DNA from: Epithemia pelagica
Lineage: Eukaryota > Protista > Bacillariophyta
Length of the DNA: 64,000 nt
Assembly (NCBI GenBank): GCA_946965045.2
Contig: OX337229.1
Location: 5,208,001-5,272,000 of the forward strand
Reading direction: 5' to 3'
The position numbers and the translations under genes were made by a program. Below, piece by piece: positions 6,991 through 18,677 of this stretch. The notes under the pieces are model-generated. The model had not been told where the DNA came from. It searched no databases and saw nothing but the letters and a program-made list of their open reading frames with translations. The stretch's first letter is position 1; every line of letters begins with the position of its first letter.

Positions 6991-9900
6991 TTAGTACGTC
7001 TTGAGCAAACGGCTCAGTCGATCATGGAGTGCATCCACATCCAGAGTGATTGGAATGCACACATAATAGTCATTGTCTTGAAATAAAACTTGCAATCCCA
7101 CGGTGGGTGACTGCAGCCATGCCAGCACATGAGAGTGCGACGTCATGTGGCGATCCACCAATTTTTGACTGGCACGAAATCGGCGATATTTCACCACCCA
7201 TGGACGCTTTCGACAATTGTCCACATACTTTAACAAGGTTTCCAACAAGGGTTTCCGAATCTCCTTGTCGAGGCATGTCCAAATCTCTGTGGTGGGGGTT
7301 TCTTGGCCGACGAAAACCGGTGAGGCGACAGGTTGAAACAAGGCATTGTGGGGACCTGGCGGCAATGGCAGTTGTGGTGGATCCGAGTGCTGTTCCAAAG
7401 TGTTGGTGAAAAAGGGTGAAACGTGTTCTTCTTCGGCTTCTTCCACGTCTTTGGTGTCTTCTTGGGCTTCTGCCTTGTCAGTGCTTGGGTTTGCGGAATT
7501 GGTACTCTCCTTTTCCAACGATACTGGCTCATTCGATGGAGCAAGAGTGTGTTCGTGACACGAGGCTTCCAAAAGTTGTAACAGTTCAATCGTGGCAGGA
7601 GGAACACGTTGTTGCATCCATTGGTGCAACAACTGGGCCATGGCATGTGGATTGCGTGAGCGAGCCACTTGAGCAATTTCATTGCGACTGCTCGAGGCTG
7701 GAACCACAACTTGACCAGACACGGCATCCAAAATGACCAAACTGGGAATCCCTTGCACACCATACACAGTGGACAAGACTGACTTGTAGTGCGGCAGTGC
7801 CTCAAACGGCATGGCTGGCCACGGCATGCTTCCATGGTAGTTGGCAAAACTGGCCGCATCGCGATCGGAACTGACAAACACAATCTCCACTCCATTTTGG
7901 AACTTGCCTCCTGATGAGGAACGTTCTTGTTTCCATGCCTCGTACACATCTCGCAATAGGGGCGTAAACGATCGACAGGGTCCGCACCAATGCGCCGAAA
8001 AGTACAAACCCACCAATCGACAATTCTCTAAAGCCACCTTGGTCGGCACCCGCAACGTTGCCGATCCACTGGTAGGATTCGCACTGTTGGGAAAGATTAA
8101 TTCCGATCCAATCGATCGTTCCAAAAAGTCCATATCCACAGGTACTTGAAAGGTGGCCACAGCAGCAGCCGCGTCCTTCTTGTGGTTGTTTTCTGTTTGC
8201 TTTTTCGTTTCCTCCATTGCTTGCCGTTTCTGAATGTCTTCCAGAAAGGGAGCTTCCAAAATGGATTCCGATATCCGGTATGGATGCGGTACCAACACTT
8301 TGGGGAGTACCAGACAGGTCGTCCAACTCGTCGTAGACTCATCCTTGTTGTGGTCGTCGTCGTGATTTTGTGGTTCCGTGTCATGCGTGTGCGTCGAACA
8401 CGAGGACCACAACAACTGGTTGGTGGTGGTGGTGGTGCCCGCCATTCCCAGCAGGTACACGGGTGATCCGGGTTGACTGGTAAACCCGGCAATGCGGGGA
8501 CCCTCGTCTTGTTGTTGCTGCTGCCAAAACTTCCAAACGGCGGCTTGTTTTTGTGCCACCGTGGCCAGGACTTGACCCGCCAGTGGTACCATGTCATTGG
8601 GCAATCGTCCCACCACCACCATGCCCGGAATCGGACGAGTTCCATTGAATTGTACCATGCATGCCGTCGTGGATGCTAGGACGGACGACGAGGATGGTGA
8701 TGAGACAACGGGAGCTTGCCAGGACAAGTTGTATCCATGGGGATGGTCGCTTCCTCGTGCACAGACAGTCCAGTCGGGATGCGCATCGACTTGTCCAATG
8801 TACACAATGGCATCGTCCGTCGTTGTTGTCTTTGGTTCCGAAGGATACAACCAGCTCGACTGAAATCCACCCAACCGTTGGGAATACACGGTCCTGAGTT
8901 TGGTGTCGTCGTCGTCCTGTTTTGCTTGTGGGTGGTTCGTGTCCGATTCCGCGTCGTTTGGAGGATCCAACTGTCCCACCACAACGACCAGAACATGCAA
9001 TGGCAGTGCCACAATTACGCGTGCCAAGTCGAGTTCGGTCGTACACGCAAAGGTCTTGCACAAGGTCATTCCATTCATCTGGGTACTGTCATCCTTGTCG
9101 TCGTTGGGAAGCAGAAAGACCGCCACCGACACATAGGAAGAAGACGACGAAGACGAGGGTAACAATGGCAAACGAGCAACGGCACAGGACGACTGGAAGG
9201 ATTGCTGGACGGACGATTGATGCTCCCGAATGCAAATGGTTTCATACGGATTCGAGGCATGAGGATTGACCGTCAAGGAAATTGTGTCGACCGTGCTTTG
9301 GTCCGTAGTATTCGATTGGTTCCACCACCATCGCAGTGGTACCGATTGAACCAGGTCTCGTCGAATCCGGTCGGCCGATGATATGGTGGTTGGCGGAATG
9401 ATGGTCGAACCATTGCTCGTGTTCGTGTCGTTCTTGTGATTGTGGGACCCCAATTCGTGTCGTGCCTGTTTCCATTCGGTGGATCCACTCAGGCGACCCA
9501 ACCAATAGTGTTGGTGATCCACCAGAGGATTCCATTCGGTCAAGGTTTTGTAGTACTCCAACTGGGCCTGTTCCAATTTGTGACGGTGTGTTTCCAATTC
9601 TTGTGGCAAGGCTGTTGATTTGGACGATTTGGAGGATTGTTGTTGAGTAGTAGTATTAAAGGAATGGACGATTTGCTCCAACAAGAGTTCCGAAGAGGTT
9701 TGGGTTTCATTGCGTCGTTTTTCGCAAAAGGATTCCTGAGCAAACTTTCGGGTATATCGGGCCGTGACATCGACCGCGGTCGTGGTGGTAAAGGCCATAA
9801 TGTGACACAAGTCCTTTCCCCATCCCTGTTCGTACATGTTGGGTTGATGCACGACCCCTTCACAGGCATCCACCATGATCCACTGATGTTGCTGCGGCAA

Positions 9901-10602
9901 ATACACTTCGACCCACACATGATCGGTCCAATCCATGACGTAGCGGGTTTCCAATCCCATGGCCCGACAATACAAGCCAAACAAATTGGCATATTCTCCA
10001 CATCGACCACACCGTGTTTCGTACAATTTGGCCACGGCATTGTAGCGAGGAAAACATGTGACGGCGTCACAGAGAGAGCATCGATACACTTCGACGCGTG
10101 AGGCACGGCCCTTACGTTCTTCGGGTGTTTCCGGAGGACGACTGCCTTGGGGGACCATAAAGTCCTCCCTCTTGTAGTTGTTGTTGGTAGTATTGGAAGG
10201 ACAGTCCGGATTGGAGCAGGCTGGTTGATTGACCCATGTCATGACATCTTGTTGGAAATACCGCGCCAATCGTTGCACAAAGATCACCGTCTCGGCGGAA
10301 CTACTACTTGGACCAAACAATTGTTGCAATTCCACCAGTCGTTGGGCGTCGGCCGTTTGATAGTCTGGAACATTACTCGCAGTGCCACGCAATTGCGACC
10401 AAGGCACTTGGGCACGAATTCGTTCCATGGTCTCGACCGACTCTTCCCAGGCTTTTACCGTTTGCACTCCTTGTACCATGCGACGGTACAAGGGATGCTC
10501 CGATAACAACTCCTCGTCTTCTTGGTTCATGTTGTTGTTGTTGGTTCTTTGTGCGTCTTTTTTCGGACAGAGGGATGGAGAAGAACCGCAAAGAGTGAGC
10601 AT
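6991..10602 (-). CDS. PNG1: Peptide:N-glycanase (transglutaminase-like core) fused to a nucleoredoxin-type thioredoxin domain and a C-terminal PUB-like domain
   Basis: Zn ligands CSNPDC and CSLC; triad motifs TRCGRCGEYAN, WTDHVWVEV and VDACEG; GRLSGSTEWKQAR. Thioredoxin motif LYFSAHWCGPC (7975-7989). C-terminal LETLLKYVDN..RPWVVKYRR resembles PUB. Single long ORF; start at 10602 or 10530. Confidence 0.9.
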   Translation of the reverse strand: MLTLCGSSPSLCPKKDAQRTNNNNMNQEDEELLSEHPLYRRMVQGVQTVKAWEESVETMERIRAQVPWSQLRGTASNVPDYQTADAQRLVELQQLFGPSSSSAETVIFVQRLARYFQQDVMTWVNQPACSNPDCPSNTTNNNYKREDFMVPQGSRPPETPEERKGRASRVEVYRCSLCDAVTCFPRYNAVAKLYETRCGRCGEYANLFGLYCRAMGLETRYVMDWTDHVWVEVYLPQQHQWIMVDACEGVVHQPNMYEQGWGKDLCHIMAFTTTTAVDVTARYTRKFAQESFCEKRRNETQTSSELLLEQIVHSFNTTTQQQSSKSSKSTALPQELETHRHKLEQAQLEYYKTLTEWNPLVDHQHYWLGRLSGSTEWKQARHELGSHNHKNDTNTSNGSTIIPPTTISSADRIRRDLVQSVPLRWWWNQSNTTDQSTVDTISLTVNPHASNPYETICIREHQSSVQQSFQSSCAVARLPLLPSSSSSSSYVSVAVFLLPNDDKDDSTQMNGMTLCKTFACTTELDLARVIVALPLHVLVVVVGQLDPPNDAESDTNHPQAKQDDDDTKLRTVYSQRLGGFQSSWLYPSEPKTTTTDDAIVYIGQVDAHPDWTVCARGSDHPHGYNLSWQAPVVSSPSSSSVLASTTACMVQFNGTRPIPGMVVVGRLPNDMVPLAGQVLATVAQKQAAVWKFWQQQQQDEGPRIAGFTSQPGSPVYLLGMAGTTTTTNQLLWSSCSTHTHDTEPQNHDDDHNKDESTTSWTTCLVLPKVLVPHPYRISESILEAPFLEDIQKRQAMEETKKQTENNHKKDAAAAVATFQVPVDMDFLERSIGSELIFPNSANPTSGSATLRVPTKVALENCRLVGLYFSAHWCGPCRSFTPLLRDVYEAWKQERSSSGGKFQNGVEIVFVSSDRDAASFANYHGSMPWPAMPFEALPHYKSVLSTVYGVQGIPSLVILDAVSGQVVVPASSSRNEIAQVARSRNPHAMAQLLHQWMQQRVPPATIELLQLLEASCHEHTLAPSNEPVSLEKESTNSANPSTDKAEAQEDTKDVEEAEEEHVSPFFTNTLEQHSDPPQLPLPPGPHNALFQPVASPVFVGQETPTTEIWTCLDKEIRKPLLETLLKYVDNCRKRPWVVKYRRFRASQKLVDRHMTSHSHVLAWLQSPTVGLQVLFQDNDYYVCIPITLDVDALHDRLSRLLKTY

Positions 10603-10662
10603 CTTGCACAAAAAAAGGAAAAATCTTATTGGGTTTGACGTTATTGGATTTGACGTTTTTCC

Positions 10663-10667
10663 AAAAA
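10663..10667 (-). terminator. RNA polymerase III T-run terminator of tRNA-Lys
   Basis: TTTTT on the minus strand, separated from the tRNA discriminator base by 1 nt. Confidence 0.75.
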
Positions 10668-10668
10668 G

Positions 10669-10741
10669 CACCCGATGTGGGGATCGAACCCACGACCACA
10701 CGATTAAGAGTCGTGCGCTCTACCGACTGAGCTAACCGGGC
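10669..10741 (-). tRNA. tRNA-Lys(CUU)
   Basis: 73 nt: GCCCGGTTAGCTCAGTCGGTAGAGCGCACGACTCTTAATCGTGTGGTCGTGGGTTCGATCCCCACATCGGGTG. It folds as a cloverleaf with anticodon CTT and A/B boxes, and has no intron. Confidence 0.97.
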
Positions 10742-11123: not shown

Positions 11124-13361
11124 TCATGCTGGTGGTGGGACCTCTAGGTTTGGTTCCGCGTGGGTCACTTTTGGTTTCTCGTCCGTAACGGGTGGCGGTG
11201 GTTGGTGTTGCTTGAAGCAGTGGTCCAACAGTGTCGTGGAAGTGCTACTGCCATTTCCACCACCACAACAGGGTTCGGTCCACCATCCCCACAACCAGGC
11301 CGACAAACTTGTCGTCGTCGTCGTCGCGTCGGTGACCACATCTCCCGACGCCAAGGACAACCATGTTGCATCATTGGTCGCGGCACCCTTGTCGTCGTGG
11401 TCGTCGTCGGTCAATGGGGTCGTTGCCACCATCAACTCGTGCGAGCACGTATCTCCCATCGCACGAGTTGCACCTGTGGTGGAGTCCAATTCCGGCTTTT
11501 GGCTCATGGCAGGTTGTGGTTTGCCATCCTCCTGATCCTCCGGGTCGGTTTCCTCTTCGGTCGTTTCCGCTTCTTCGGTCGAATCCAACAAGGAAATGGC
11601 AAACGTTGGGTGGTGGTCGTCTTCCTCGTCGTCGTCGTCGGTATCGGCCGTTGGATCGTGGTAATATTCCGTGGGATCAAACAAGCCATTCGTGTCGTCG
11701 TTGTCGTCGTCGTCCTTGTGGTGACGTGACACGAGGTGAGGGTGCGAGTGGCACCGACGACGACGACGGCCATGACCGCCCAACAAGGAACCATCGGCCG
11801 TGGAAGGACCGCCAAAAAAAGGGTCAGATCGTGACTTGTCTGGATGGTAGTGTGTGGAATAATAGGGAGGACCGGACAGGCTGCGCATCGGTCGTGGTGG
11901 CAGAGGTCGGCGTCGTCGACTCTTGCGACGCGGCGAGGATGATGAAACAGTAGAAGACAGTCGGTGGTGTTGGGTGGTGGACGATGACAAGGACAACAAG
12001 GGCGATACCACGGCCTTGTCGTCGTCCTTGTCATCCAGATGTTGGTTGGTGGTAGTGGTGGCTGTCCTAGTAGACGAGGATACCAAGAGGGAATGTCTTT
12101 CTGTCACGGTTGGAGCAGGACCTGAATTCTCAGGTCCCCCCGTGTCGGGTGGGGGTGGCGAGGGTGGTGGAGACAAGGACACTCCTCCCTCCTGGGACGA
12201 AGATGAGGATGACGATAGCGACAACAATGGTGGTGGTGGAAGGGGAAGAACCATGGGTGGGGATTTCGTCTTGGTTTTTGGTTGTTCCGCACAAACCTGT
12301 TCTTGTTGTTCATGTGGTGATGGCGGTAGCAACAATGGCTCGGTCGGCAGTGGTGTGGTGGGCCGTGGCGAGGATGGAACCACCAGTCGCAGTGGAGCAG
12401 GACGGTCCATACCCTGCCAATGGGGCGGCACAGGACTGGTCGTGGCAATGGCGGTTGTCCTGGTTGTGGTCATCAAGGGGGGAGACGGGGGAGAGGGAGG
12501 AGGAGACGGACGCACCGTTTCCAATGGTGGTGAAGGAGGGCGAGTATCCGGACACGGAGATGGTGGTGGTTGTTCCAGATGGTTGGTTGGAGGAACCAAG
12601 AATTGCAACTCCAATTCGGCTTGCGCGAGCTCGCGTTGCAAATCGAGAATTCCACCATCCTGCGCCACATCCTCATCGTGATCCTCGTCCGAGGAGCAGG
12701 AGGACGAACCAGAGGATGCTCTCGACAGGGCAATGGTGGCGGCCGAACGAAGAACGGGTTCATGCGAGGAACAATAAAAGGAATCGAGGCTCTGATTCAA
12801 TTTGGCTTCCACGAGGCGCAAGGAGGCCTTGAATACTTTGGAAGCTGATGTATTGGGAGTCGGTGTCGGCGACTCGTGGTTCGTGTCCGTGATTGTTGTG
12901 GTTGTCAAGGGAGCCGTCGTTGTCGTCGTCGTCGTCGTGAGGCTCGTGGCAACGGATAATTTTGGAGCTCCTGGTGGTCCTCCTGGTTTGGGAGTTTCCA
13001 CGCAAGGAACCAGGGACGAATGGTGCATCGAGTGGCACGGCGAGGTTCCTTTTTGGAAGACGAGGCTGATATCTCTGGCCTCCATCACTCTGACGTCACA
13101 GTCCGTTTGATGCAATGGGTGGGTCGTTCGTCTCGTTCCTTCCTGCTCGTCCACTACTGGCTGGTGGGCACTGTGCAAAAGGGTGCTGCTGTCGCTGTTG
13201 GACTCTTGGTTGCTTGGACCATGCACAACAGATGTAACGAAAGACTCCATCTTCTTCCCCGTTCTTGGAGGTTTCCAAGGCACACAAGGGAACTCTTGCC
13301 CGAATGTGGTCAATAAAGTGACGTTGCAGTTTGCAGTCGAGAAACGGTGGTCGGTCTTCAA
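11124..13361 (-). CDS. Low-complexity Pro/Ser/Thr/Asp-rich hypothetical protein
   Basis: 745-codon ORF with a short coiled-coil-like segment (LDLQRELAQAELEL) and no recognisable domain; true start uncertain. Confidence 0.55.
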   Translation of the reverse strand: MKTDHRFSTANCNVTLLTTFGQEFPCVPWKPPRTGKKMESFVTSVVHGPSNQESNSDSSTLLHSAHQPVVDEQEGTRRTTHPLHQTDCDVRVMEARDISLVFQKGTSPCHSMHHSSLVPCVETPKPGGPPGAPKLSVATSLTTTTTTTTAPLTTTTITDTNHESPTPTPNTSASKVFKASLRLVEAKLNQSLDSFYCSSHEPVLRSAATIALSRASSGSSSCSSDEDHDEDVAQDGGILDLQRELAQAELELQFLVPPTNHLEQPPPSPCPDTRPPSPPLETVRPSPPPSPPSPPLMTTTRTTAIATTSPVPPHWQGMDRPAPLRLVVPSSPRPTTPLPTEPLLLPPSPHEQQEQVCAEQPKTKTKSPPMVLPLPPPPLLSLSSSSSSSQEGGVSLSPPPSPPPPDTGGPENSGPAPTVTERHSLLVSSSTRTATTTTNQHLDDKDDDKAVVSPLLSLSSSTTQHHRLSSTVSSSSPRRKSRRRRPLPPRPMRSLSGPPYYSTHYHPDKSRSDPFFGGPSTADGSLLGGHGRRRRRCHSHPHLVSRHHKDDDDNDDTNGLFDPTEYYHDPTADTDDDDEEDDHHPTFAISLLDSTEEAETTEEETDPEDQEDGKPQPAMSQKPELDSTTGATRAMGDTCSHELMVATTPLTDDDHDDKGAATNDATWLSLASGDVVTDATTTTTSLSAWLWGWWTEPCCGGGNGSSTSTTLLDHCFKQHQPPPPVTDEKPKVTHAEPNLEVPPPA

Positions 13362-14040: not shown

Positions 14041-17000
14041 TTATAACGTTCCATTTTCTTTGCGTTCAAAGTATTCCTCCAAGGAGATGCCTTGTCGTTT
14101 GCGCTCTCGTTTGCGTTTCTTGGCCATGGCGGCGGCAATCGAATCCGGAGCGGCTGCCCCCACAGCCACCAAGGATGCGGCAATCATGGAATGGTCCTTG
14201 GCCAAGGCTTCTTCGTCAATGACAAACTGGTGGGGTTGATTTACCGTCATGCTCGAGGACAATCCTCCGCCGCCGTCCTCTTGCACCAAATGAGGCGCCG
14301 GAACGTCCTCCTCCTCCTCTTCCATAACCGCATCTTCCGGCGCTGTACCTTCTTTGGTGTCGGAGGCATCTTGTTTCTTGCTGGAGTCTTGTCCTTCTTC
14401 CTGTTTCACGGCAGTATCACCATTTTCGTTTTCATCGTCATCGCCATCCTTGTCTTGGTCTTGTCCGACCTTCCATAGAATCTTGGGCTTGACTTTACGA
14501 CGCGCATACGGATTGAACTCGGCAGCACCTCCACCAGCAGCGTTGTTCCCAGCGTTGCTGGCTTTCGTGGCGTCCTTGTTGGCTTCTCGATCCGCTCGTT
14601 GATTTTCCGCCAACGCACGTTGATTGACCTTGGCCCAATTGCGATCTTTCGATCGAGCGTTGAGACGACGTTTCCGATCTTCCACCTCCTGCAACAGGCG
14701 TTTCTCTTCCAACTGACGCTGATCCAACAGTTCCTTGGCCTTGTTCAATTCCTCTTGCGCATCTCCTACAGCCTTGTTCAAGTCATGCTCATCTTCATTT
14801 TCACCCGCTTCCATTAACCGTGATTTGGATTCCGTCAATTTCCGTTCCGCCTCGGCCAGGCCATCTCGTGCCGCCTGGACGGCAATCGCCACCCGTGTTT
14901 GTTCAGATCCCAAATTTCCCAACGTCTTGCCCAGTTTCTTTTTCTTTTCCAAATTCCGTTCAATGTCTTCGTTGGTATACGTGTAGTTGTTGACTAAGTT
15001 GTCCTGGACACGGCGTAACTTGTTGGCTCGACGTTTGGACAAGACTTCTTGACGGATATTCTTTTGCGCATAGACATATTTTTGGACATCCTTGGCATCC
15101 GGAGGGGCATCGGAAACCAGGCTCATGGGGAATTCTCGTTCACTACTACCGAATTTCAAACGCAGCATTTGGTTGGTCGTAATCGGTTTGTCCCCCTTTT
15201 TGGTCACTGGAAATTTGTAGGTAATGTTGCCCGTCTGAACATCGACAATCTCACACAAACGATACACTTTTTCGTTGGATTCGTCTTCTCCAATAAACAG
15301 ACGGACAAAGCATTCCAACACAGCTGCCTTGAAAAAGGGCTCATTGCACCAACGAGCCAAACGGCGACGAGGAATCGTTACCATTTGATATTCTTCCAGC
15401 GAAGCTTCGACCACAGACGAATCTGCACCCTTCCCGTCCTCCCCTCCCAATTTGCCCTTTTCACCCAACGCGCCCTCTTCATCCCCGGAATCAGCCGCGC
15501 TTTGATCCAAACGTGATACGGCCCCGTCCTTGGTTGTTTCCGTAGCGTGTTGCCAAGGCGCTTCATAGTCGCCGTCCGAATCTTCATCCGAATCATCTCC
15601 AAAGTCTTCCTCACTGTCATCATCACTGTCGGCCGCTCCCGATTGTTGTTTCTGTAATTTACGATTTTTCTTCAAGGCCGCCAAGGCTGCAGCCTTTTTG
15701 CTCTTGGCACCCGTCGCATCCTTATCGCGAATGGATTCGCGTTTTCCTGCACCTGCCAATTTACGAGCCAATTCTTCATCACCTTCTGTGGCGTCTGCTG
15801 GCGTTGCCCCCGAGGATTTGGCTTTTTTCGAAGCTGGTGCCTTTACGTCGCTGTCCGATCCGCGCTTTTTGGATTTGGGTGCCTTGGAAGTGGAACCTCC
15901 TGCGCCCGCCTTGGCTTTCTTGGCTTCTCGAATAGCCTTTTTCATATCGTACTGTTCCTTCAGCTTTTCAAACCGCTCACCGAGAATAGCCTCACGTTCC
16001 AATTCTGGTAGGGAATCCAAATACTTACGATCCTCGTCGTCCCGAATCAGAGCCTCTGTATTATTTTCGTCGAGTTCCATTTCGTCTTCGCCATCATCGT
16101 CCTCGTCACTGCTAATGTCGTCGTCTCCAAAAATTTCTTCATTTTCCTCAATCACAATCTTCTTCCGTGAAGCAGCCGCTCGCTTGGGACGTGCGGGAGA
16201 TGCACTAGAGGCTTTTTTGGGAGAAGGTTTGGTCTTTTTGGCAGCTGGCTTCTTCTTTCCTTTGCTCTTCGAAGGACCTTCTTCGTAGTCATCATCGTCG
16301 TCGTCCTCTTCCGATTCTTCCTCCTCCTCCATTTCCTCTTCTTCTTCAGACTCTTCTTCTTCCTCCTCCTCCTCCTCTTCTTCTTCGGATTCCTCTTTTT
16401 TACGGCGTAACTGCTTACCACCTGCAGGAGACCGACTTATAGAAACAGGTTGCTTTTTCTTGGGAGATGCCGTAGCTTTCCCCTTTTTCGCTTCCGCTTC
16501 CGGTCGTCTCAGTTGTTTGCCACGGGGAGCTGTGGTGACTTTATTGGCAGCACCTTTTTTGGTTGTTGCTGTCTTGGTCTCCGATTCGTCCTCCTCTTCG
16601 TCCTCCTCTTCCGATGCCTTGGGAGAAGCGCGTAATTGTTTGCCACGAACCACAGGTTTCACGACTTTCTTACTGGAGCTTGCTGCCTTTTTCGGTGGAG
16701 CACTTGCTTTGGGTTCCTTTTCTTCTTCGTCGTCGTCTTCATCATTTTGTGTTGGTGGACGTAGTTGCTTTCCTCTGCGAGGACTTGGTTGTACCTTTAC
16801 TGTAGGCTTAATGGAGGAAGATGGTTTGGGTGCCGCAGCCGCCTTTGAATCCGTTGTTTCCTTGGCCTGAGGGGGGCGCAGTTGTTTGCCACGACCGACA
16901 GGTTTTGCTACAACTTGTTGCGTTTTGGTTTCCTTGACTGGAGGTTCTTCTTCCTCCTCCTCTTCTTCGTCATCCTCATCCGAATCCTCTACTTCGTCTC

Positions 17001-18377
17001 CGGGAGGTGGCCGCAAGAGAGACAACATTTTCCCACCTCCCCGAGGAACTACACGAATCGGTTGTTGTGGTGGTGGTGGTGCCGGTGCCGGAGCTGCCGG
17101 TGTAGGTGCCACAACTGCTTCAGGTTGTGTGTGTAGATTGTCTTCTTTGGCAGCTGCCGTCAAGTCTTCAACCTCCATGGCCGACCCTTTCCCTTCCTGA
17201 TCCTCGTCCTCATCTTCCTCGTCGTCTTCTTGAGGTGGAGGCTGCATGCGCATCAAACTTTTCCCGCCACCGCGGCGAGCCACTTGCACGGTTTGCGTTC
17301 GAGGAGGCTCCGGTGCTTCTTCTTCCTCATCATCGTCCTCGTCTTCTTCGTCCTCAGCTGGTGGTGGTCGCATCCTCATTAAACTCTTACCACCCCCACG
17401 CGGGTGGTGGGCTACTTGTACTCGTTCCACAGTGGGCTCTTTTGAGGCATGATTGTCGTCGCCATCTTTGAGGTCTTCGTCGTCATCCTCAAGTTCTTCA
17501 TTTTCGTCGTCGTCATCTTCTTCTTCTGGTGGAGGAGGCATGCGCATCAGGCTTTTTCCTCCACCCCGGGGCGCAACCTGTACTCGTTGTACCTGCGCTG
17601 GCTCTTGCTCTGCCTCCTTCAAGTCCTCTTCATCGTCCTTGAGTTCCTCGTCTTCGTCATCATCATCGTCGTCATCCTCCTCATGTGCAGGTGGAGGCAT
17701 TCGAAGAAGACTCTTACCACCACCTCGTTGCGCTAGTTGCACACGATGAACGGGTGCTGCGGGTTCTTCTTCTTCATCGTCATCGTCTTCATCGTCATCT
17801 TCGTCCTCTTCTTCCGCAGGTGGTCGCATTCTCATCAAACTCTTCCCGCCGCCTCGAGGATGATGATGTTGCTGAGGTTGTACCCGAACCGGCTCGGTCT
17901 CTTCCTCCTCGTCGTCCTTCAAATCTTCTTCATCGTCTTTGAGTTCTTCGTCCGAATCATCCTCGTCGTCGTCGTCCGCAGGCCTGCATTAGTGTCAATC
18001 AACAGTTTTATGTAAGTTCACCTCTTCATCAAGACACTTCCTCCAGAACTCGGACCAGCAGAATGCAACGCTTGCTTGTTGTTGTCTTTCTCTCCACTTA
18101 CCCCGGTGGTCGGAGATATTTCCCTCCCGCAGGTCGTTGAAATTGCTTGCCACCCCCTCGAAAGGCTACGGCAGCTGCGGCATGCGGTTGGGACGGAGGC
18201 TGCGTTTCCAAGCGCTCTTCCTCTTCTTCTTCGTCATCCTCGTCGTCGTCATCGTCATCGTCCGAATCCGATTCGTCGTCGACTGGGCCTCCTCCTTGGG
18301 GTGGACGAAAATACTTGCCGCCACCGCCACTGCCCATGGCACTCAATTGTTTGCCTCCCCCACGGCTGGGAGCCACA

Positions 18378-18410
<33 letters not shown>

Positions 18411-18677
18411 GGCCGCGAACTGGGTTCGTCCGAATCGTCATCGTCGTCAAACCGCCGTTTTTGTTCGCCAGGAAAGGTACGACGAATGTTGGGCTGTGAC
18501 CGACAACAACATACAAGCAAACCCCGAATCCAACGGTTTATGGTCGGTGCAAAGAAAGGATCAAAGAAATGAGTCGTTGGAGCAAGACAATCAAGTCTAC
18601 CAATCCTTTCGTGCTCCATTTGGAAATGGTACCTTTTGGACTGTTTGGAAGACCAGTTTCGACACACGACGTACCAT
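14041..18677 (-). CDS. RTF1: RTF1 (Paf1 complex subunit) with a very long repetitive N-terminal arm
   Basis: HMD-like DEDRKYLDSLPELEREAILGER and Plus3 VTIPRRRLARWCNEPFFKAAVLECFVRLFIG. Model join(18675-18677, 18102-18493, 14041-17983). Introns 18494-18674 (GTACGT..CACAG) and 17984-18101 (GTAAGT..CTAATGCAG) are both frame-compatible. Confidence 0.9.

What the first reader, a model, noticed from the sequence alone, without database searches (positions are those of the whole stretch)
16380..18400. RTF1 N-terminal arm has 15 histone-H3-tail-like motifs separated by acidic tracts
Seen: 15 motifs of the type RGGGKSL (x5), RGGGKML, RGGGKQL, RGGGKQF, GGGGKYF, AGGKYL, RGKQLR (x4, one reading APRGKQLR) and AGGKQL, mostly followed by Pro-rich linkers and Asp/Glu runs. 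Established: H3 residues 9-20 are KSTGGKAPRKQL, containing K14 (GGK) and K18 (KQL), and Rtf1 promotes H2B ubiquitylation and downstream H3 methylation. Inference: a multivalent histone-mimic array that could be acetylated or methylated and recruit or decoy chromatin readers on the elongating polymerase.
Basis: partly seen in the sequence, partly recalled or inferred. Interest (0 to 1): 0.75.

Follow-up and report, generated by a model that had tools for sequence, protein, structure and literature searches.

The report
Diatom RTF1 conserved Gly-Lys motif array
The disordered front end of this diatom's RTF1 transcription-elongation protein carries 15 copies of a short Gly-Lys-x-Leu motif that recurs in the RTF1 of every diatom examined and in almost no other protein, so it is a real, selected and apparently undescribed docking or modification array, though it resembles the histone H3 tail only weakly.

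Summary
All 15 motifs lie in one spliced minus-strand gene (14041-18677, 1445 aa) that encodes RTF1, with an HMD and a Plus3 domain. Shuffling the arm gives 0.3 motifs on average.

The arm belongs to the RTF1 transcript. Both introns appear as exact GT..AG joints in public run X4, and the corrected N-terminus (MPNIRRTFPG) matches orthologues.

The motif is present in diatom RTF1 wherever I could check:
- All 53 RTF1 sequences of at least 780 aa carry 1-14 copies (median 7). They span pennates and centrics, including Aulacoseira and Corethron.
- The consensus is [R/P]-G-G-G-K-[Q/S/M]-L-R-x-P followed by an acidic tract.
- The central residue is Lys in 208 of 209 framed instances and never Arg. 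The residue before it is Gly in 198 of 199.
- The five RGGGKSL copies differ at 66 synonymous but only 12 nonsynonymous codon pairs, so they are old and under selection.
- A motif profile against 1.84 billion proteins found 62 hits. All are RTF1 or RTF1 fragments except one orphan protein and one borderline hit.

H3 likeness is poor. H3K14 scores 1.6 bits and H3K18 -4.6, against a median of 25.6 for real units. H4K8 (11.0) and H2AK5 (9.6) come closer.

My reading is a diatom-specific, multivalent, Lys-centred short-linear-motif array. Its partner is unknown, and histone mimicry is unproven.

The parts
14041..18677 (-). RTF1 gene, start codon to stop codon. It has 3 coding exons and encodes 1445 aa.
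   Evidence: The ORF is and the spliced translation has no internal stop. Plus3 and HMD identify it as RTF1.
18675..18677 (-). Start codon, the only coding part of exon 1. It is followed directly by a GTACGT donor.
   Evidence: Sequence read. The run X4 joint 18493->18675 skips 181 nt. The resulting N-terminus MPNIRRTFPG matches P0003 and P0010.
18494..18674 (-). Intron 1, 181 nt, GT..AG.
   Evidence: joint, ends CT..AC on the + strand, depth 254 in X4. X4 has zero depth across 18508-18668.
18102..18493 (-). Exon 2: conserved N-terminal peptide, poly-Q, and motifs 1-4 (K49, K61, K117, K126).
   Evidence: Many public ORF fragments hold the same exon, running from QPNIRRTFPG to GGKYLRP.
17984..18101 (-). 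Intron 2, 118 nt, GTAAGT..CAG.
   Evidence: The X4 joint 17982->18101 skips 118 nt, depth 452.
14041..17983 (-). Exon 3: motifs 5-15, acidic and basic linker, HMD, Plus3, coiled coil and C-terminal region.
18335..18364 (-). Motif 1, RGGGKQLSAM (K49).
18299..18328 (-). Motif 2, GGGGKYFRPP (K61).
18131..18160 (-). Motif 3, RGGGKQFQRP (K117).
18104..18133 (-). Motif 4, PAGGKYLRPP (K126). It lies just before the intron-2 donor.
17827..17856 (-). Motif 5, RGGGKSLMRM (K179).
17698..17727 (-). Motif 6, RGGGKSLLRM (K222).
17539..17568 (-). Motif 7, RGGGKSLMRM (K275).
17371..17400 (-). Motif 8, RGGGKSLMRM (K331).
17245..17274 (-). Motif 9, RGGGKSLMRM (K373).
17014..17043 (-). Motif 10, RGGGKMLSLL (K450).
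16870..16899 (-). Motif 11, VGRGKQLRPP (K498).
16753..16782 (-). Motif 12, PRRGKQLRPP (K537).
16624..16653 (-). Motif 13, VVRGKQLRAS (K580).
16501..16530 (-). Motif 14, APRGKQLRRP (K621).
16399..16428 (-). Motif 15, PAGGKQLRRK (K655).
15913..16038 (-). Histone modification domain (HMD), aa 781-822, core LPELEREAILGERFEK.
   Evidence: phmmer hit to yeast Rtf1 HMD structures 5E8B and 5EMX, E=1.2e-5. The columns are near-invariant in the orthologue alignment A2. AF2 pLDDT is about 90 in the orthologue.
15073..15384 (-). Plus3 domain, starting near aa 999.
   Evidence: Pfam PF03126, E=4.7e-24. Human RTF1 structures 8A3Y, 6TED and 4L1P match at E down to 3e-14.

Best explanation
The arm is an intrinsically disordered N-terminal extension specific to diatom RTF1. 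It carries a multivalent array of one short linear motif: a hydrophobic pair about 7-10 residues upstream, then [R/P]-G-G-G-K-[Q/S/M]-L. Two tails occur: R-[R/P]-P (class i) or x-x-M-[R/Q]-P-P (class ii). Each copy is followed by an Asp/Glu tract.

Shown here:
- The array is part of the RTF1 mRNA.
- It is ancient, and its copy number varies (1-15).
- It is essentially restricted to RTF1.
- Each copy is held by purifying selection that is residue-specific (Gly-Lys, Leu). Charge alone does not account for it.

Inferred:
- Each copy inserts its Lys, exposed by the flexible glycines, and its Leu into the same pocket of one conserved nuclear partner.
- That partner would be an enzyme acting on lysine or a folded reader domain.
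- RTF1 travelling with RNA polymerase II would then display up to 15 landing or modification sites. This resembles the way the Spt5 CTR and the Pol II CTD display repeated motifs.
- The acidic spacers would keep the arm extended and soluble, and may contact histones.

The partner is not identified. Of the candidates, a histone-type lysine enzyme or reader of the Gly-Lys class is my first guess (about 1 in 4).
For: - Gene model and transcript: splice joints of 181 and 118 nt in X4, with contigs running 14408-16276 and 16394-17982.
- RTF1 identity.
- Not chance: 15 motifs against 0.3 expected.
- Conservation: all 53 RTF1 of at least 780 aa have 1-14 copies, median 7. Taxa include Thalassiosira, Cyclotella, Attheya, Aulacoseira, Corethron, Cylindrotheca and Pseudo-nitzschia.
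- Consensus and two tail classes.
- Residue specificity: within GG?[QSM]L the centre is K in 208 of 209 and never R. Within ?K[QSM]LR the first residue is G in 198 of 199. At +3, R occurs 120 times and K once, although the arms hold 1380 K and 1344 R overall.
- Selection within the window: among the five RGGGKSL copies, 66 of 120 codon pairs differ synonymously and 12 nonsynonymously. No DNA-level tandem repeat of the unit exists.
- Selection between haplotypes or strains: 12 of 14 listed variants in the arm are synonymous, and the 2 nonsynonymous ones lie at least 12 residues from any motif lysine.
- Restriction to RTF1: a unit profile against 1.84e9 proteins gives 62 hits, all RTF1 or RTF1 N-arm fragments except P0142 and the borderline P0180. 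A word search with a dense arm returned only RTF1.
- Disorder: AF2 gives pLDDT 28-39 over the whole arm of Cylindrotheca RTF1, with HMD and Plus3 near 90.
Against: - No partner, modification or binding has been shown. Everything past conservation is inference.
- The instances are phylogenetically related, so counts such as 208 of 209 overstate the number of independent events.
- My instance list was anchored on G-K-x-[LFMI], which fixes those columns in the PSSM by construction. The K-versus-R and G tests were framed on the flanks to avoid this.
- AF2 shows no confidence bump at the motifs, so there is no sign of intramolecular docking. This says nothing about intermolecular binding.
- R at +3 is present in only about 57% of units, so part of the motif is class-specific.
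- Absence outside diatoms is not formally shown, because the big library has no taxonomy. Only two non-diatom-like RTF1 (P0029 and P0030, no array: 0 and 1 isolated regex match outside any arm) were looked at.
Confidence: 0.65

Rival explanations
1. Histone H3-tail mimic. The motifs imitate H3 K14 (GGK) and K18 (KQL). They would be acetylated or methylated by H3 enzymes and would recruit or decoy H3 readers.
For: GGK and KQL are both in H3 9-20 (textbook sequence). The motif Lys is invariant and preceded by Gly, as at H3K14. Histone mimicry that involves PAF1C has a precedent in influenza NS1 (reviews PMC6028506 and PMC10222983, found).
Against: Each H3 site matches only half of the motif. PSSM scores are 1.6 bits for H3K14 and -4.6 for H3K18, against a 5th percentile of 13.3 for real units. 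About 1% and 4% of ordinary lysines in this window's ORFs score as high. The near-invariant Leu at +2 is Pro at H3K14, and the invariant Gly at -1 is Arg at H3K18. No histone was retrieved by the unit profile from all PDB chains at E<=10.
Confidence: 0.05
2. Mimic or substrate of the H4/H2A Gly-Lys type. The units copy the G-G-K-x-L context of H4K8 or the R-G-K-Q context of H2AK5. They would be substrates or docking sites for MYST/NuA4-type acetyltransferases, deacetylases or acetyl-lysine readers that travel with the polymerase.
For: H4K8 (11.0 bits) and H2AK5 (9.6 bits) score above all 821 background lysines of the window's long ORFs, whose maximum is 6.7. Strict Gly at -1 and Lys never replaced by Arg fit access to an enzyme active site. 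Established knowledge: sites of MYST-family enzymes on H4 and H2A are mostly G-K.
Against: These histone sites still fall in the lowest 2-3% of real units, and most of their score comes from glycines. R at +3 and P at +5 have no counterpart in H4 or H2A. The histone sequences used were the canonical ones from memory, not this diatom's own. There are no modification data.
Confidence: 0.17
3. Nucleosome acidic-patch binder. The L-R dipeptide acts as an arginine anchor of the LANA/IL-33 type (G-M-R-L-R-S-G against G-K-Q-L-R-R-P). It would tether RTF1 multivalently to nucleosomes, where its HMD stimulates H2B ubiquitylation.
For: At +3, R occurs 120 times and K once, and Leu directly precedes it, as in LANA (from memory, not tested). 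This fits functionally with an HMD that acts on nucleosomal H2B (HMD confirmed). H2B ubiquitylation exists in diatoms (PMC4504042).
Against: Arg at +3 is missing in about 43% of units, including the whole class-ii group KSL[MA]xM. G-K-x-L is universal, so Lys and not Arg is the core. Residues after the Arg are R/P-P, not the small S/G of known anchors. The unit profile did not retrieve the LANA peptide chain from the PDB.
Confidence: 0.08
4. Non-specific charge-block disordered region. Alternating basic patches and long acidic tracts would drive condensate formation or histone chaperoning, and the exact motif would be incidental.
For: The first 700 aa hold 215 D+E and 97 K+R in blocks. The arm is fully disordered in AF2. 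Copy number and spacer length vary freely between species.
Against: Charge alone cannot explain Lys never becoming Arg, Gly 198 of 199 at -1, Leu or Phe at +2 in over 90% of units, or the excess of synonymous change inside the cores.
Confidence: 0.04
5. RGG/RG box. The units would be arginine-methylation or RNA-binding sites.
For: RGGG or GRG precedes the Lys in many units. All ten RGGGK and RGK units of the window have it.
Against: Arg is present at -4 in 28% of units, at -2 in 11% and at -3 in 3%. Units with A/S/P/T-GGK are equally conserved. There is at most one RGG per unit, separated by long acidic runs, unlike clustered RGG boxes.
Confidence: 0.01

Closest known systems
RTF1 (Paf1 complex subunit) of yeast, animals and plants
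   Same: It has the Plus3 domain, the HMD with the LPE[LM]ERE core, the coiled-coil region after Plus3 and the conserved C-terminus. It also has an acidic, disordered N-terminal region ahead of the HMD.
   Different: Model-organism RTF1 is about 550-710 aa. Its N-terminal region is known for the LLALA box that binds the Chd1 CHCT domain (PMC12390759, PMC13289920). This protein is 1445 aa, and about 660 aa hold 15 G-K-x-L units. The two non-diatom-like RTF1 examined have no array (P0029: 0; P0030: a single regex match outside any arm). The 2026 survey of elongation-factor domains does not contain the word diatom.
Spt5 C-terminal repeats and Pol II CTD heptads
   Same: Both are tandem, copy-number-variable arrays of one short consensus motif, sited in a disordered region of the elongation machinery and serving as multivalent landing pads. 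I propose this as the working analogy.
   Different: Those repeats are contiguous and centred on Ser/Thr/Tyr phospho-acceptors. Here the units are centred on an invariant Gly-Lys, spaced 10-55 residues apart and separated by Asp/Glu tracts. No modification is known.
Histone mimics (influenza NS1 ARSK, G9a ARKT and others)
   Same: They are short lysine-centred motifs in disordered regions that are read by chromatin enzymes or readers. One of them targets PAF1C (reviews PMC6028506 and PMC10222983).
   Different: Known mimics copy 4-5 contiguous histone residues and are usually single-copy. Here no histone segment matches across the whole core, and H3 matches by halves only. There are up to 15 copies, and the motif sits on a PAF1C subunit itself, not on a protein that targets PAF1C.
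TALE repeat loop (..VVAIAS-xx-GGKQALE..)
   Same: It was the best, but non-significant, PDB match of the unit profile. It shares a hydrophobic stretch followed by GGGKQ (E=0.038, no stretch passing on its own).
   Different: TALE units are 33-35-aa two-helix repeats that pack into a superhelix. The RTF1 arm has no predicted secondary structure, and its units are separated by acidic spacers of variable length. I treat this as a coincidence of a 5-residue string.

Membership tests
RTF1 / Plus3 family | Plus3 domain | tested here: met
   PF03126, E=4.7e-24 and 85.5 bits against a cutoff of 27. Human RTF1 Plus3 structures match at E down to 3.4e-14.
RTF1 / Plus3 family | Histone modification domain N-terminal of Plus3 | tested here: met
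   aa 781-822 match the yeast Rtf1 HMD crystal chains 5E8B and 5EMX, E=1.2e-5 and 2.6e-5.
RTF1 / Plus3 family | Full-length orthology with annotated RTF1 proteins | tested here: met
   34-52% identity over 98-100% of the 694-aa core to 28 diatom RTF1. It nests inside the pennate diatom RTF1 clade in the tree.
Histone H3-tail mimic | Contiguous sequence match to H3 around the modifiable lysine, on both flanks | tested here: not met
   H3K14 scores 1.6 bits and H3K18 -4.6, against a median of 25.6 and a 5th percentile of 13.3 for units. No histone was retrieved from the PDB at E<=10.
Histone mimic (any tail) | Lysine modified by histone enzymes and bound by histone readers | not testable with these tools
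   This needs mass spectrometry, enzyme assays or pull-downs. No diatom acetylome table could be searched for these peptides.
Histone mimic of H4K8 / H2AK5 type | Match to the G-G-K-x-L or R-G-K-Q context | tested here: inconclusive
   11.0 and 9.6 bits are above all 821 background lysines but within the lowest 3% of real units.
RGG/RG box | Clustered RGG/RG repeats in which Arg is the conserved residue | tested here: not met
   Arg at -4, -3 and -2 occurs in only 28%, 3% and 11% of units. There is one RGG at most per unit.
TALE-type repeat | 33-35-aa helical hairpin repeat | tested here: not met
   There is no helix in the arm and pLDDT is 28-39. The PDB match is confined to about 15 residues and is not significant.
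Arginine-anchor acidic-patch motif (LANA type) | Invariant anchoring Arg in every functional copy | tested here: inconclusive
   Arg at +3 is strongly preferred over Lys (120 to 1) where a basic residue is present, but it is absent from about 43% of units.
CTD/CTR-like repeat array of elongation factors | Repeated short consensus in a disordered region of an elongation-complex subunit | tested here: met
   The Ser/Thr-Pro phospho-acceptor core of those families is absent, so this is an analogy and not membership.

The most novel reading that the evidence does not exclude
The arm would be a histone-tail-like, code-bearing appendage of the Paf1 complex. Its invariant Gly-Lys lysines would be reversibly acetylated or methylated by histone-type enzymes, in a context closest to H4K8 and H2AK5. 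Bromodomain, YEATS or chromo-type modules would read them. Diatom RTF1 would then carry up to 15 writable 'tails' along genes with RNA polymerase II, recruiting chromatin readers or buffering them away from nucleosomes.
Probability: 0.15. Interest if true: 0.85.

Novelty: new variant of a known kind. Interest (0 to 1): 0.6.

Why it matters
RTF1 links elongating RNA polymerase II to H2B ubiquitylation and to Chd1. Its N-terminal region is among the least understood parts of the elongation complex (PMC13289920).

Diatoms, a major group of marine primary producers, have all kept a repeated, residue-specific Gly-Lys motif there. I found no paper that describes it.

Because the motif is so sharply defined, the question is directly testable with a 12-residue peptide and its K-to-R and L-to-A variants. 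Those peptides should fish out the partner. Transformable diatoms (Phaeodactylum, Thalassiosira) allow arm deletions.

If the lysines are modified, this would be a rare case of a histone-like signalling array built into the transcription machinery itself.

The work also corrects gene models. Many public diatom RTF1 entries are truncated and lack the arm.

Tried and rejected
- DNA-level tandem repeat of the unit: none found, only short acidic-codon repeats. Recent slippage or assembly artefact is rejected.
- ESM Atlas feature search with the arm: no usable hit.
- Literature: 'GGKQL' gave 2 unrelated papers. Rtf1+diatom gave nothing relevant. The Phaeodactylum acetylome paper itself is not in the library, so I could not check for modified RTF1 peptides.
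- AF2 of a full orthologue (Cylindrotheca, 31-sequence alignment), to look for folding of the units or docking on Plus3 or HMD: the arm is uniformly low-confidence with no bump at the motifs.
- The orphan protein P0142, the only non-RTF1 carrier of the units. Pfam gave only a sub-threshold C1-like zinc finger. The PDB search gave nothing, and so did the Atlas search. Its contig holds that gene alone. Single-sequence AF2 of its C-terminal 652 aa failed at pLDDT 32, so no fold search was run.
- Short motif-less RTF1 hits (460-680 aa) could have meant loss of the arm. The tree puts them next to long motif-bearing sequences at near-zero distance. One starts inside a motif, and one has a 90%-cluster mate with 7 motifs. 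They are truncated gene calls.
- RGG-box, TALE-like and pure charge-pattern readings were rejected or downgraded (see rival explanations).
- Earlier scan notes by sequence and by the word Spt5 returned nothing.
- All four runs in the read lay-out are kept as contigs of unrecorded kind. The spliced form in X4 shows that the joined sequence exists, and X4 has no depth in intron 1. Expression level and strand cannot be read from these data.


Full report
**Observation.** The region lies inside a minus-strand gene. An uninterrupted ORF runs from 17922 down to the stop at 14041, and a second ORF upstream (18098-18667) holds the first four motifs.

Reading the sequence shows a GTAAGT donor right after ..GGKYLRPPG and a CAG acceptor 118 nt downstream, which joins the two ORFs in frame. 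Upstream, the orthologues begin MPNIRRTFPG or MPNIKRRF. In the window the same peptide is preceded by a CAG acceptor, and 181 nt further up there is an ATG followed directly by GTACGT. The coding part of exon 1 is therefore the start codon alone.

Public run X4 contains exactly these two joints: 18493->18675 skipping 181 nt and 17982->18101 skipping 118 nt, both CT..AC on the plus strand. X4 has no depth inside intron 1. Runs X1-X3 hold the unspliced DNA.

The spliced protein is 1445 aa. Shuffling the arm gives 0.3 G-K-x-[LFMI] matches on average and never more than 4 in 20000 trials.

**Identity of the gene.**
- Pfam finds a Plus3 domain at E=4.7e-24.
- The C-terminal half aligns to human RTF1 in elongation-complex structures.
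- Residues 781-822 match the crystal structures of the yeast Rtf1 histone modification domain at E=1e-5.
- The core is 34-52% identical to 28 diatom RTF1 proteins, and the protein nests among pennate diatoms in a tree of 127 sequences.

The reading frame is continuous, the introns are spliced as predicted, and complete transcriptome-derived orthologues carry arm and Plus3 together.

**Conservation.** Every RTF1 orthologue long enough to include its N-terminus has the same motif.
- All 53 sequences of at least 780 aa carry 1-14 copies ahead of the HMD, with a median of 7. The window's 15 is the largest number seen.
- Named sources include Thalassiosira pseudonana, T. exigua, Cyclotella cryptica, Attheya, Aulacoseira subarctica, Corethron, Cylindrotheca closterium and Pseudo-nitzschia delicatissima. 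These are raphid pennates, polar centrics and radial centrics.
- The many 460-680-aa hits without motifs are truncated gene calls. They sit next to long motif-bearing sequences at near-zero distance. One begins inside a motif, and one has a 90%-identity cluster mate with seven motifs.

From about 250 non-redundant units the consensus is [R/P]-G-G-G-K-[Q 61%, S 16%, M 9%]-[L 82%, F 11%]. Two tails follow: R-[R/P]-P, or x-x-M-[R/Q]-P-P. Val and Ile are enriched 7-10 residues upstream, and Asp/Glu dominate from +9 onward. Both tail classes, and roughly the same order of classes along the arm, occur in Aulacoseira and in pennates. The architecture therefore predates the radiation of the extant diatom groups sampled here.

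**Kind of constraint.** I framed the test on the flanking residues so that the anchor would not be assumed.
- The centre of GG?[QSM]L is Lys in 208 of 209 cases and never Arg.
- The residue before K[QSM]LR is Gly in 198 of 199 cases.
- Position +3 is Arg 120 times and Lys once.
- The arms as a whole contain Lys and Arg in equal numbers.

Within the window, the five RGGGKSL copies differ synonymously at 66 of 120 compared codon pairs and nonsynonymously at 12. No DNA-level tandem repeat of the unit is detectable. The copies are therefore old and individually maintained.

Of the 14 listed sequence variants in the arm between the window and the public runs, 12 are synonymous. The two amino-acid changes lie at least 12 residues from any motif lysine.

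This pattern is what a peptide read residue by residue in a binding groove or active site looks like. A region selected only for charge would not show it.

**Distribution outside RTF1.** I built a 37-position profile from 109 units (alignment A1) and searched 1.84 billion representative proteins. It found 62 proteins at E<=0.001. On inspection they are RTF1 proteins or fragments of RTF1 N-arms. Many contain the exon-2 peptide from QPNIRRTFPG to GGKYLRP and then run into what is evidently the same intron.

There are two exceptions.
- P0180 is a borderline, probably spurious hit.
- P0142 is a 1051-aa orphan from a single-gene metagenomic contig. It has four tandem units, a sub-threshold C1-like zinc finger and no Plus3.

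A word-based search with a motif-dense arm returned only RTF1. I found no paper describing the motif. A 2026 survey of elongation-factor domains across eukaryotes does not mention diatoms.

**Structure.** AlphaFold2 on Cylindrotheca RTF1 with a 31-sequence alignment gives pLDDT 28-39 and no secondary structure over the whole arm. There is no rise at the motifs. The HMD, Plus3 and the following helices reach about 90. The arm is a disordered region that carries short linear motifs.

**Histone likeness.** I scored canonical H3, H4 and H2A tails, typed from textbook knowledge, with a PSSM covering positions -5 to +6.

| Site or set | Score (bits) |
|---|---|
| Real units, median | 25.6 |
| Real units, 5th percentile | 13.3 |
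| H4K8 | 11.0 |
| H2AK5 | 9.6 |
| Highest of 821 lysines in the window's other long ORFs | 6.7 |
| H3K14 | 1.6 |
| H3K18 | -4.6 |

H3K14 supplies only the left half (GGK, then Pro where Leu is required). H3K18 supplies only the right half (KQL, but Arg where Gly is invariant). H4K8 (GGKGL) and H2AK5 (RGKQ) are better matches and exceed every background lysine, yet they would be among the weakest 3% of real units.

The unit profile retrieves no histone from all PDB chains even at E<=10. Its best, non-significant match is the GGGKQ loop of TALE repeats.

The H3-specific reading is therefore not supported. A looser 'Gly-Lys histone-tail-type site' reading remains open.

**Mechanism.**
- Shown: a diatom-wide, RTF1-restricted, disordered array of a Lys-centred motif under residue-specific purifying selection, expressed as part of RTF1.
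- Inferred: it works as a multivalent set of identical docking or modification sites carried on the elongation complex, analogous in logic to the Spt5 CTR or the Pol II CTD. The acidic tracts would act as spacers that may also contact histones. I put this generic mechanism at about 0.65.
- Partner: not identified.
  - My first guess is a lysine-directed enzyme or reader of the kind that handles G-K sites on H4 and H2A. It rests on glycines exposing an invariant Lys that Arg cannot replace.
  - Second is an acidic-patch arginine anchor, which fits the Leu-Arg pair but fails for the 43% of units without Arg at +3.
  - Pure charge patterning, RGG-box and TALE-like readings are poorly compatible with the data.

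**Verdict.** This is a real and well-defined feature: a lineage-specific elaboration of a known protein. I found no description of it. It is directly testable with peptides and with transformable diatoms. The named H3 resemblance is not supported, and modification or reader binding remains unproven.

Noticed in passing
window 18494-18677 (minus strand): The coding part of exon 1 is only the ATG, followed by a 181-nt intron. The extreme N-terminus that results (MPNIRRTFPG) is itself conserved. Pennates have MPNI[RK]R[TR]F and centrics have MPRTK[RK]RF or MVRTKKHF. This is a second, single-copy basic motif of unknown role.
   Followed up: partly
P0142 / locus L001 173-3328: This is the only non-RTF1 protein found with the units. 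Four recent tandem copies (..IGGKxFRNVSTGKQ[FL]xPPP plus an acidic tract) are joined to a sub-threshold C1-like zinc finger and a roughly 550-aa unknown C-terminal region, on a single-gene metagenomic contig. It may show that the unit is a portable module, or it may be a chimeric or captured fragment.
   Followed up: partly
public RTF1 entries P0031-P0125: Most public diatom RTF1 gene calls of 460-680 aa are N-terminally truncated and lack the arm and often the HMD. Dozens of separate small ORF entries (50-220 aa) are the orphaned exon 2 of the same gene.
   Followed up: yes
window about 16040-16130 (aa about 750-780) and orthologues: A conserved box E-x-I-F-G-D-D-D-[VIM]-S-S-D-E sits between the motif array and the HMD in pennate RTF1. 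By position and acidic context it might be the counterpart of the LLALA box that binds Chd1 in yeast and human. I did not test this.
   Followed up: no
alignment A1 against the PDB: The unit profile's best PDB match is the TALE repeat segment ..PEQVVAIASNGGGKQ.., summed over 15 repeats at E=0.038 with no single stretch significant. I take it as coincidental.
   Followed up: partly
window 17067 and SNPs listed: The public runs differ from the window by many single-base variants and by an in-frame 3-nt deletion in a (GTG)5 run at 17067. This is consistent with a second haplotype or strain. The arm variants are mostly synonymous.
   Followed up: partly
window 6991-10701 (minus strand): The downstream neighbour ORF (1236 aa) combines transglutaminase-core and Rad4 domains with a thioredoxin-like domain. 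That would make it a PNGase/Rad4-like protein fused to a thioredoxin fold.
   Followed up: no
window 11124-13361 (minus strand): A 745-aa ORF between that gene and RTF1 has no Pfam match at E<=0.001.
   Followed up: no
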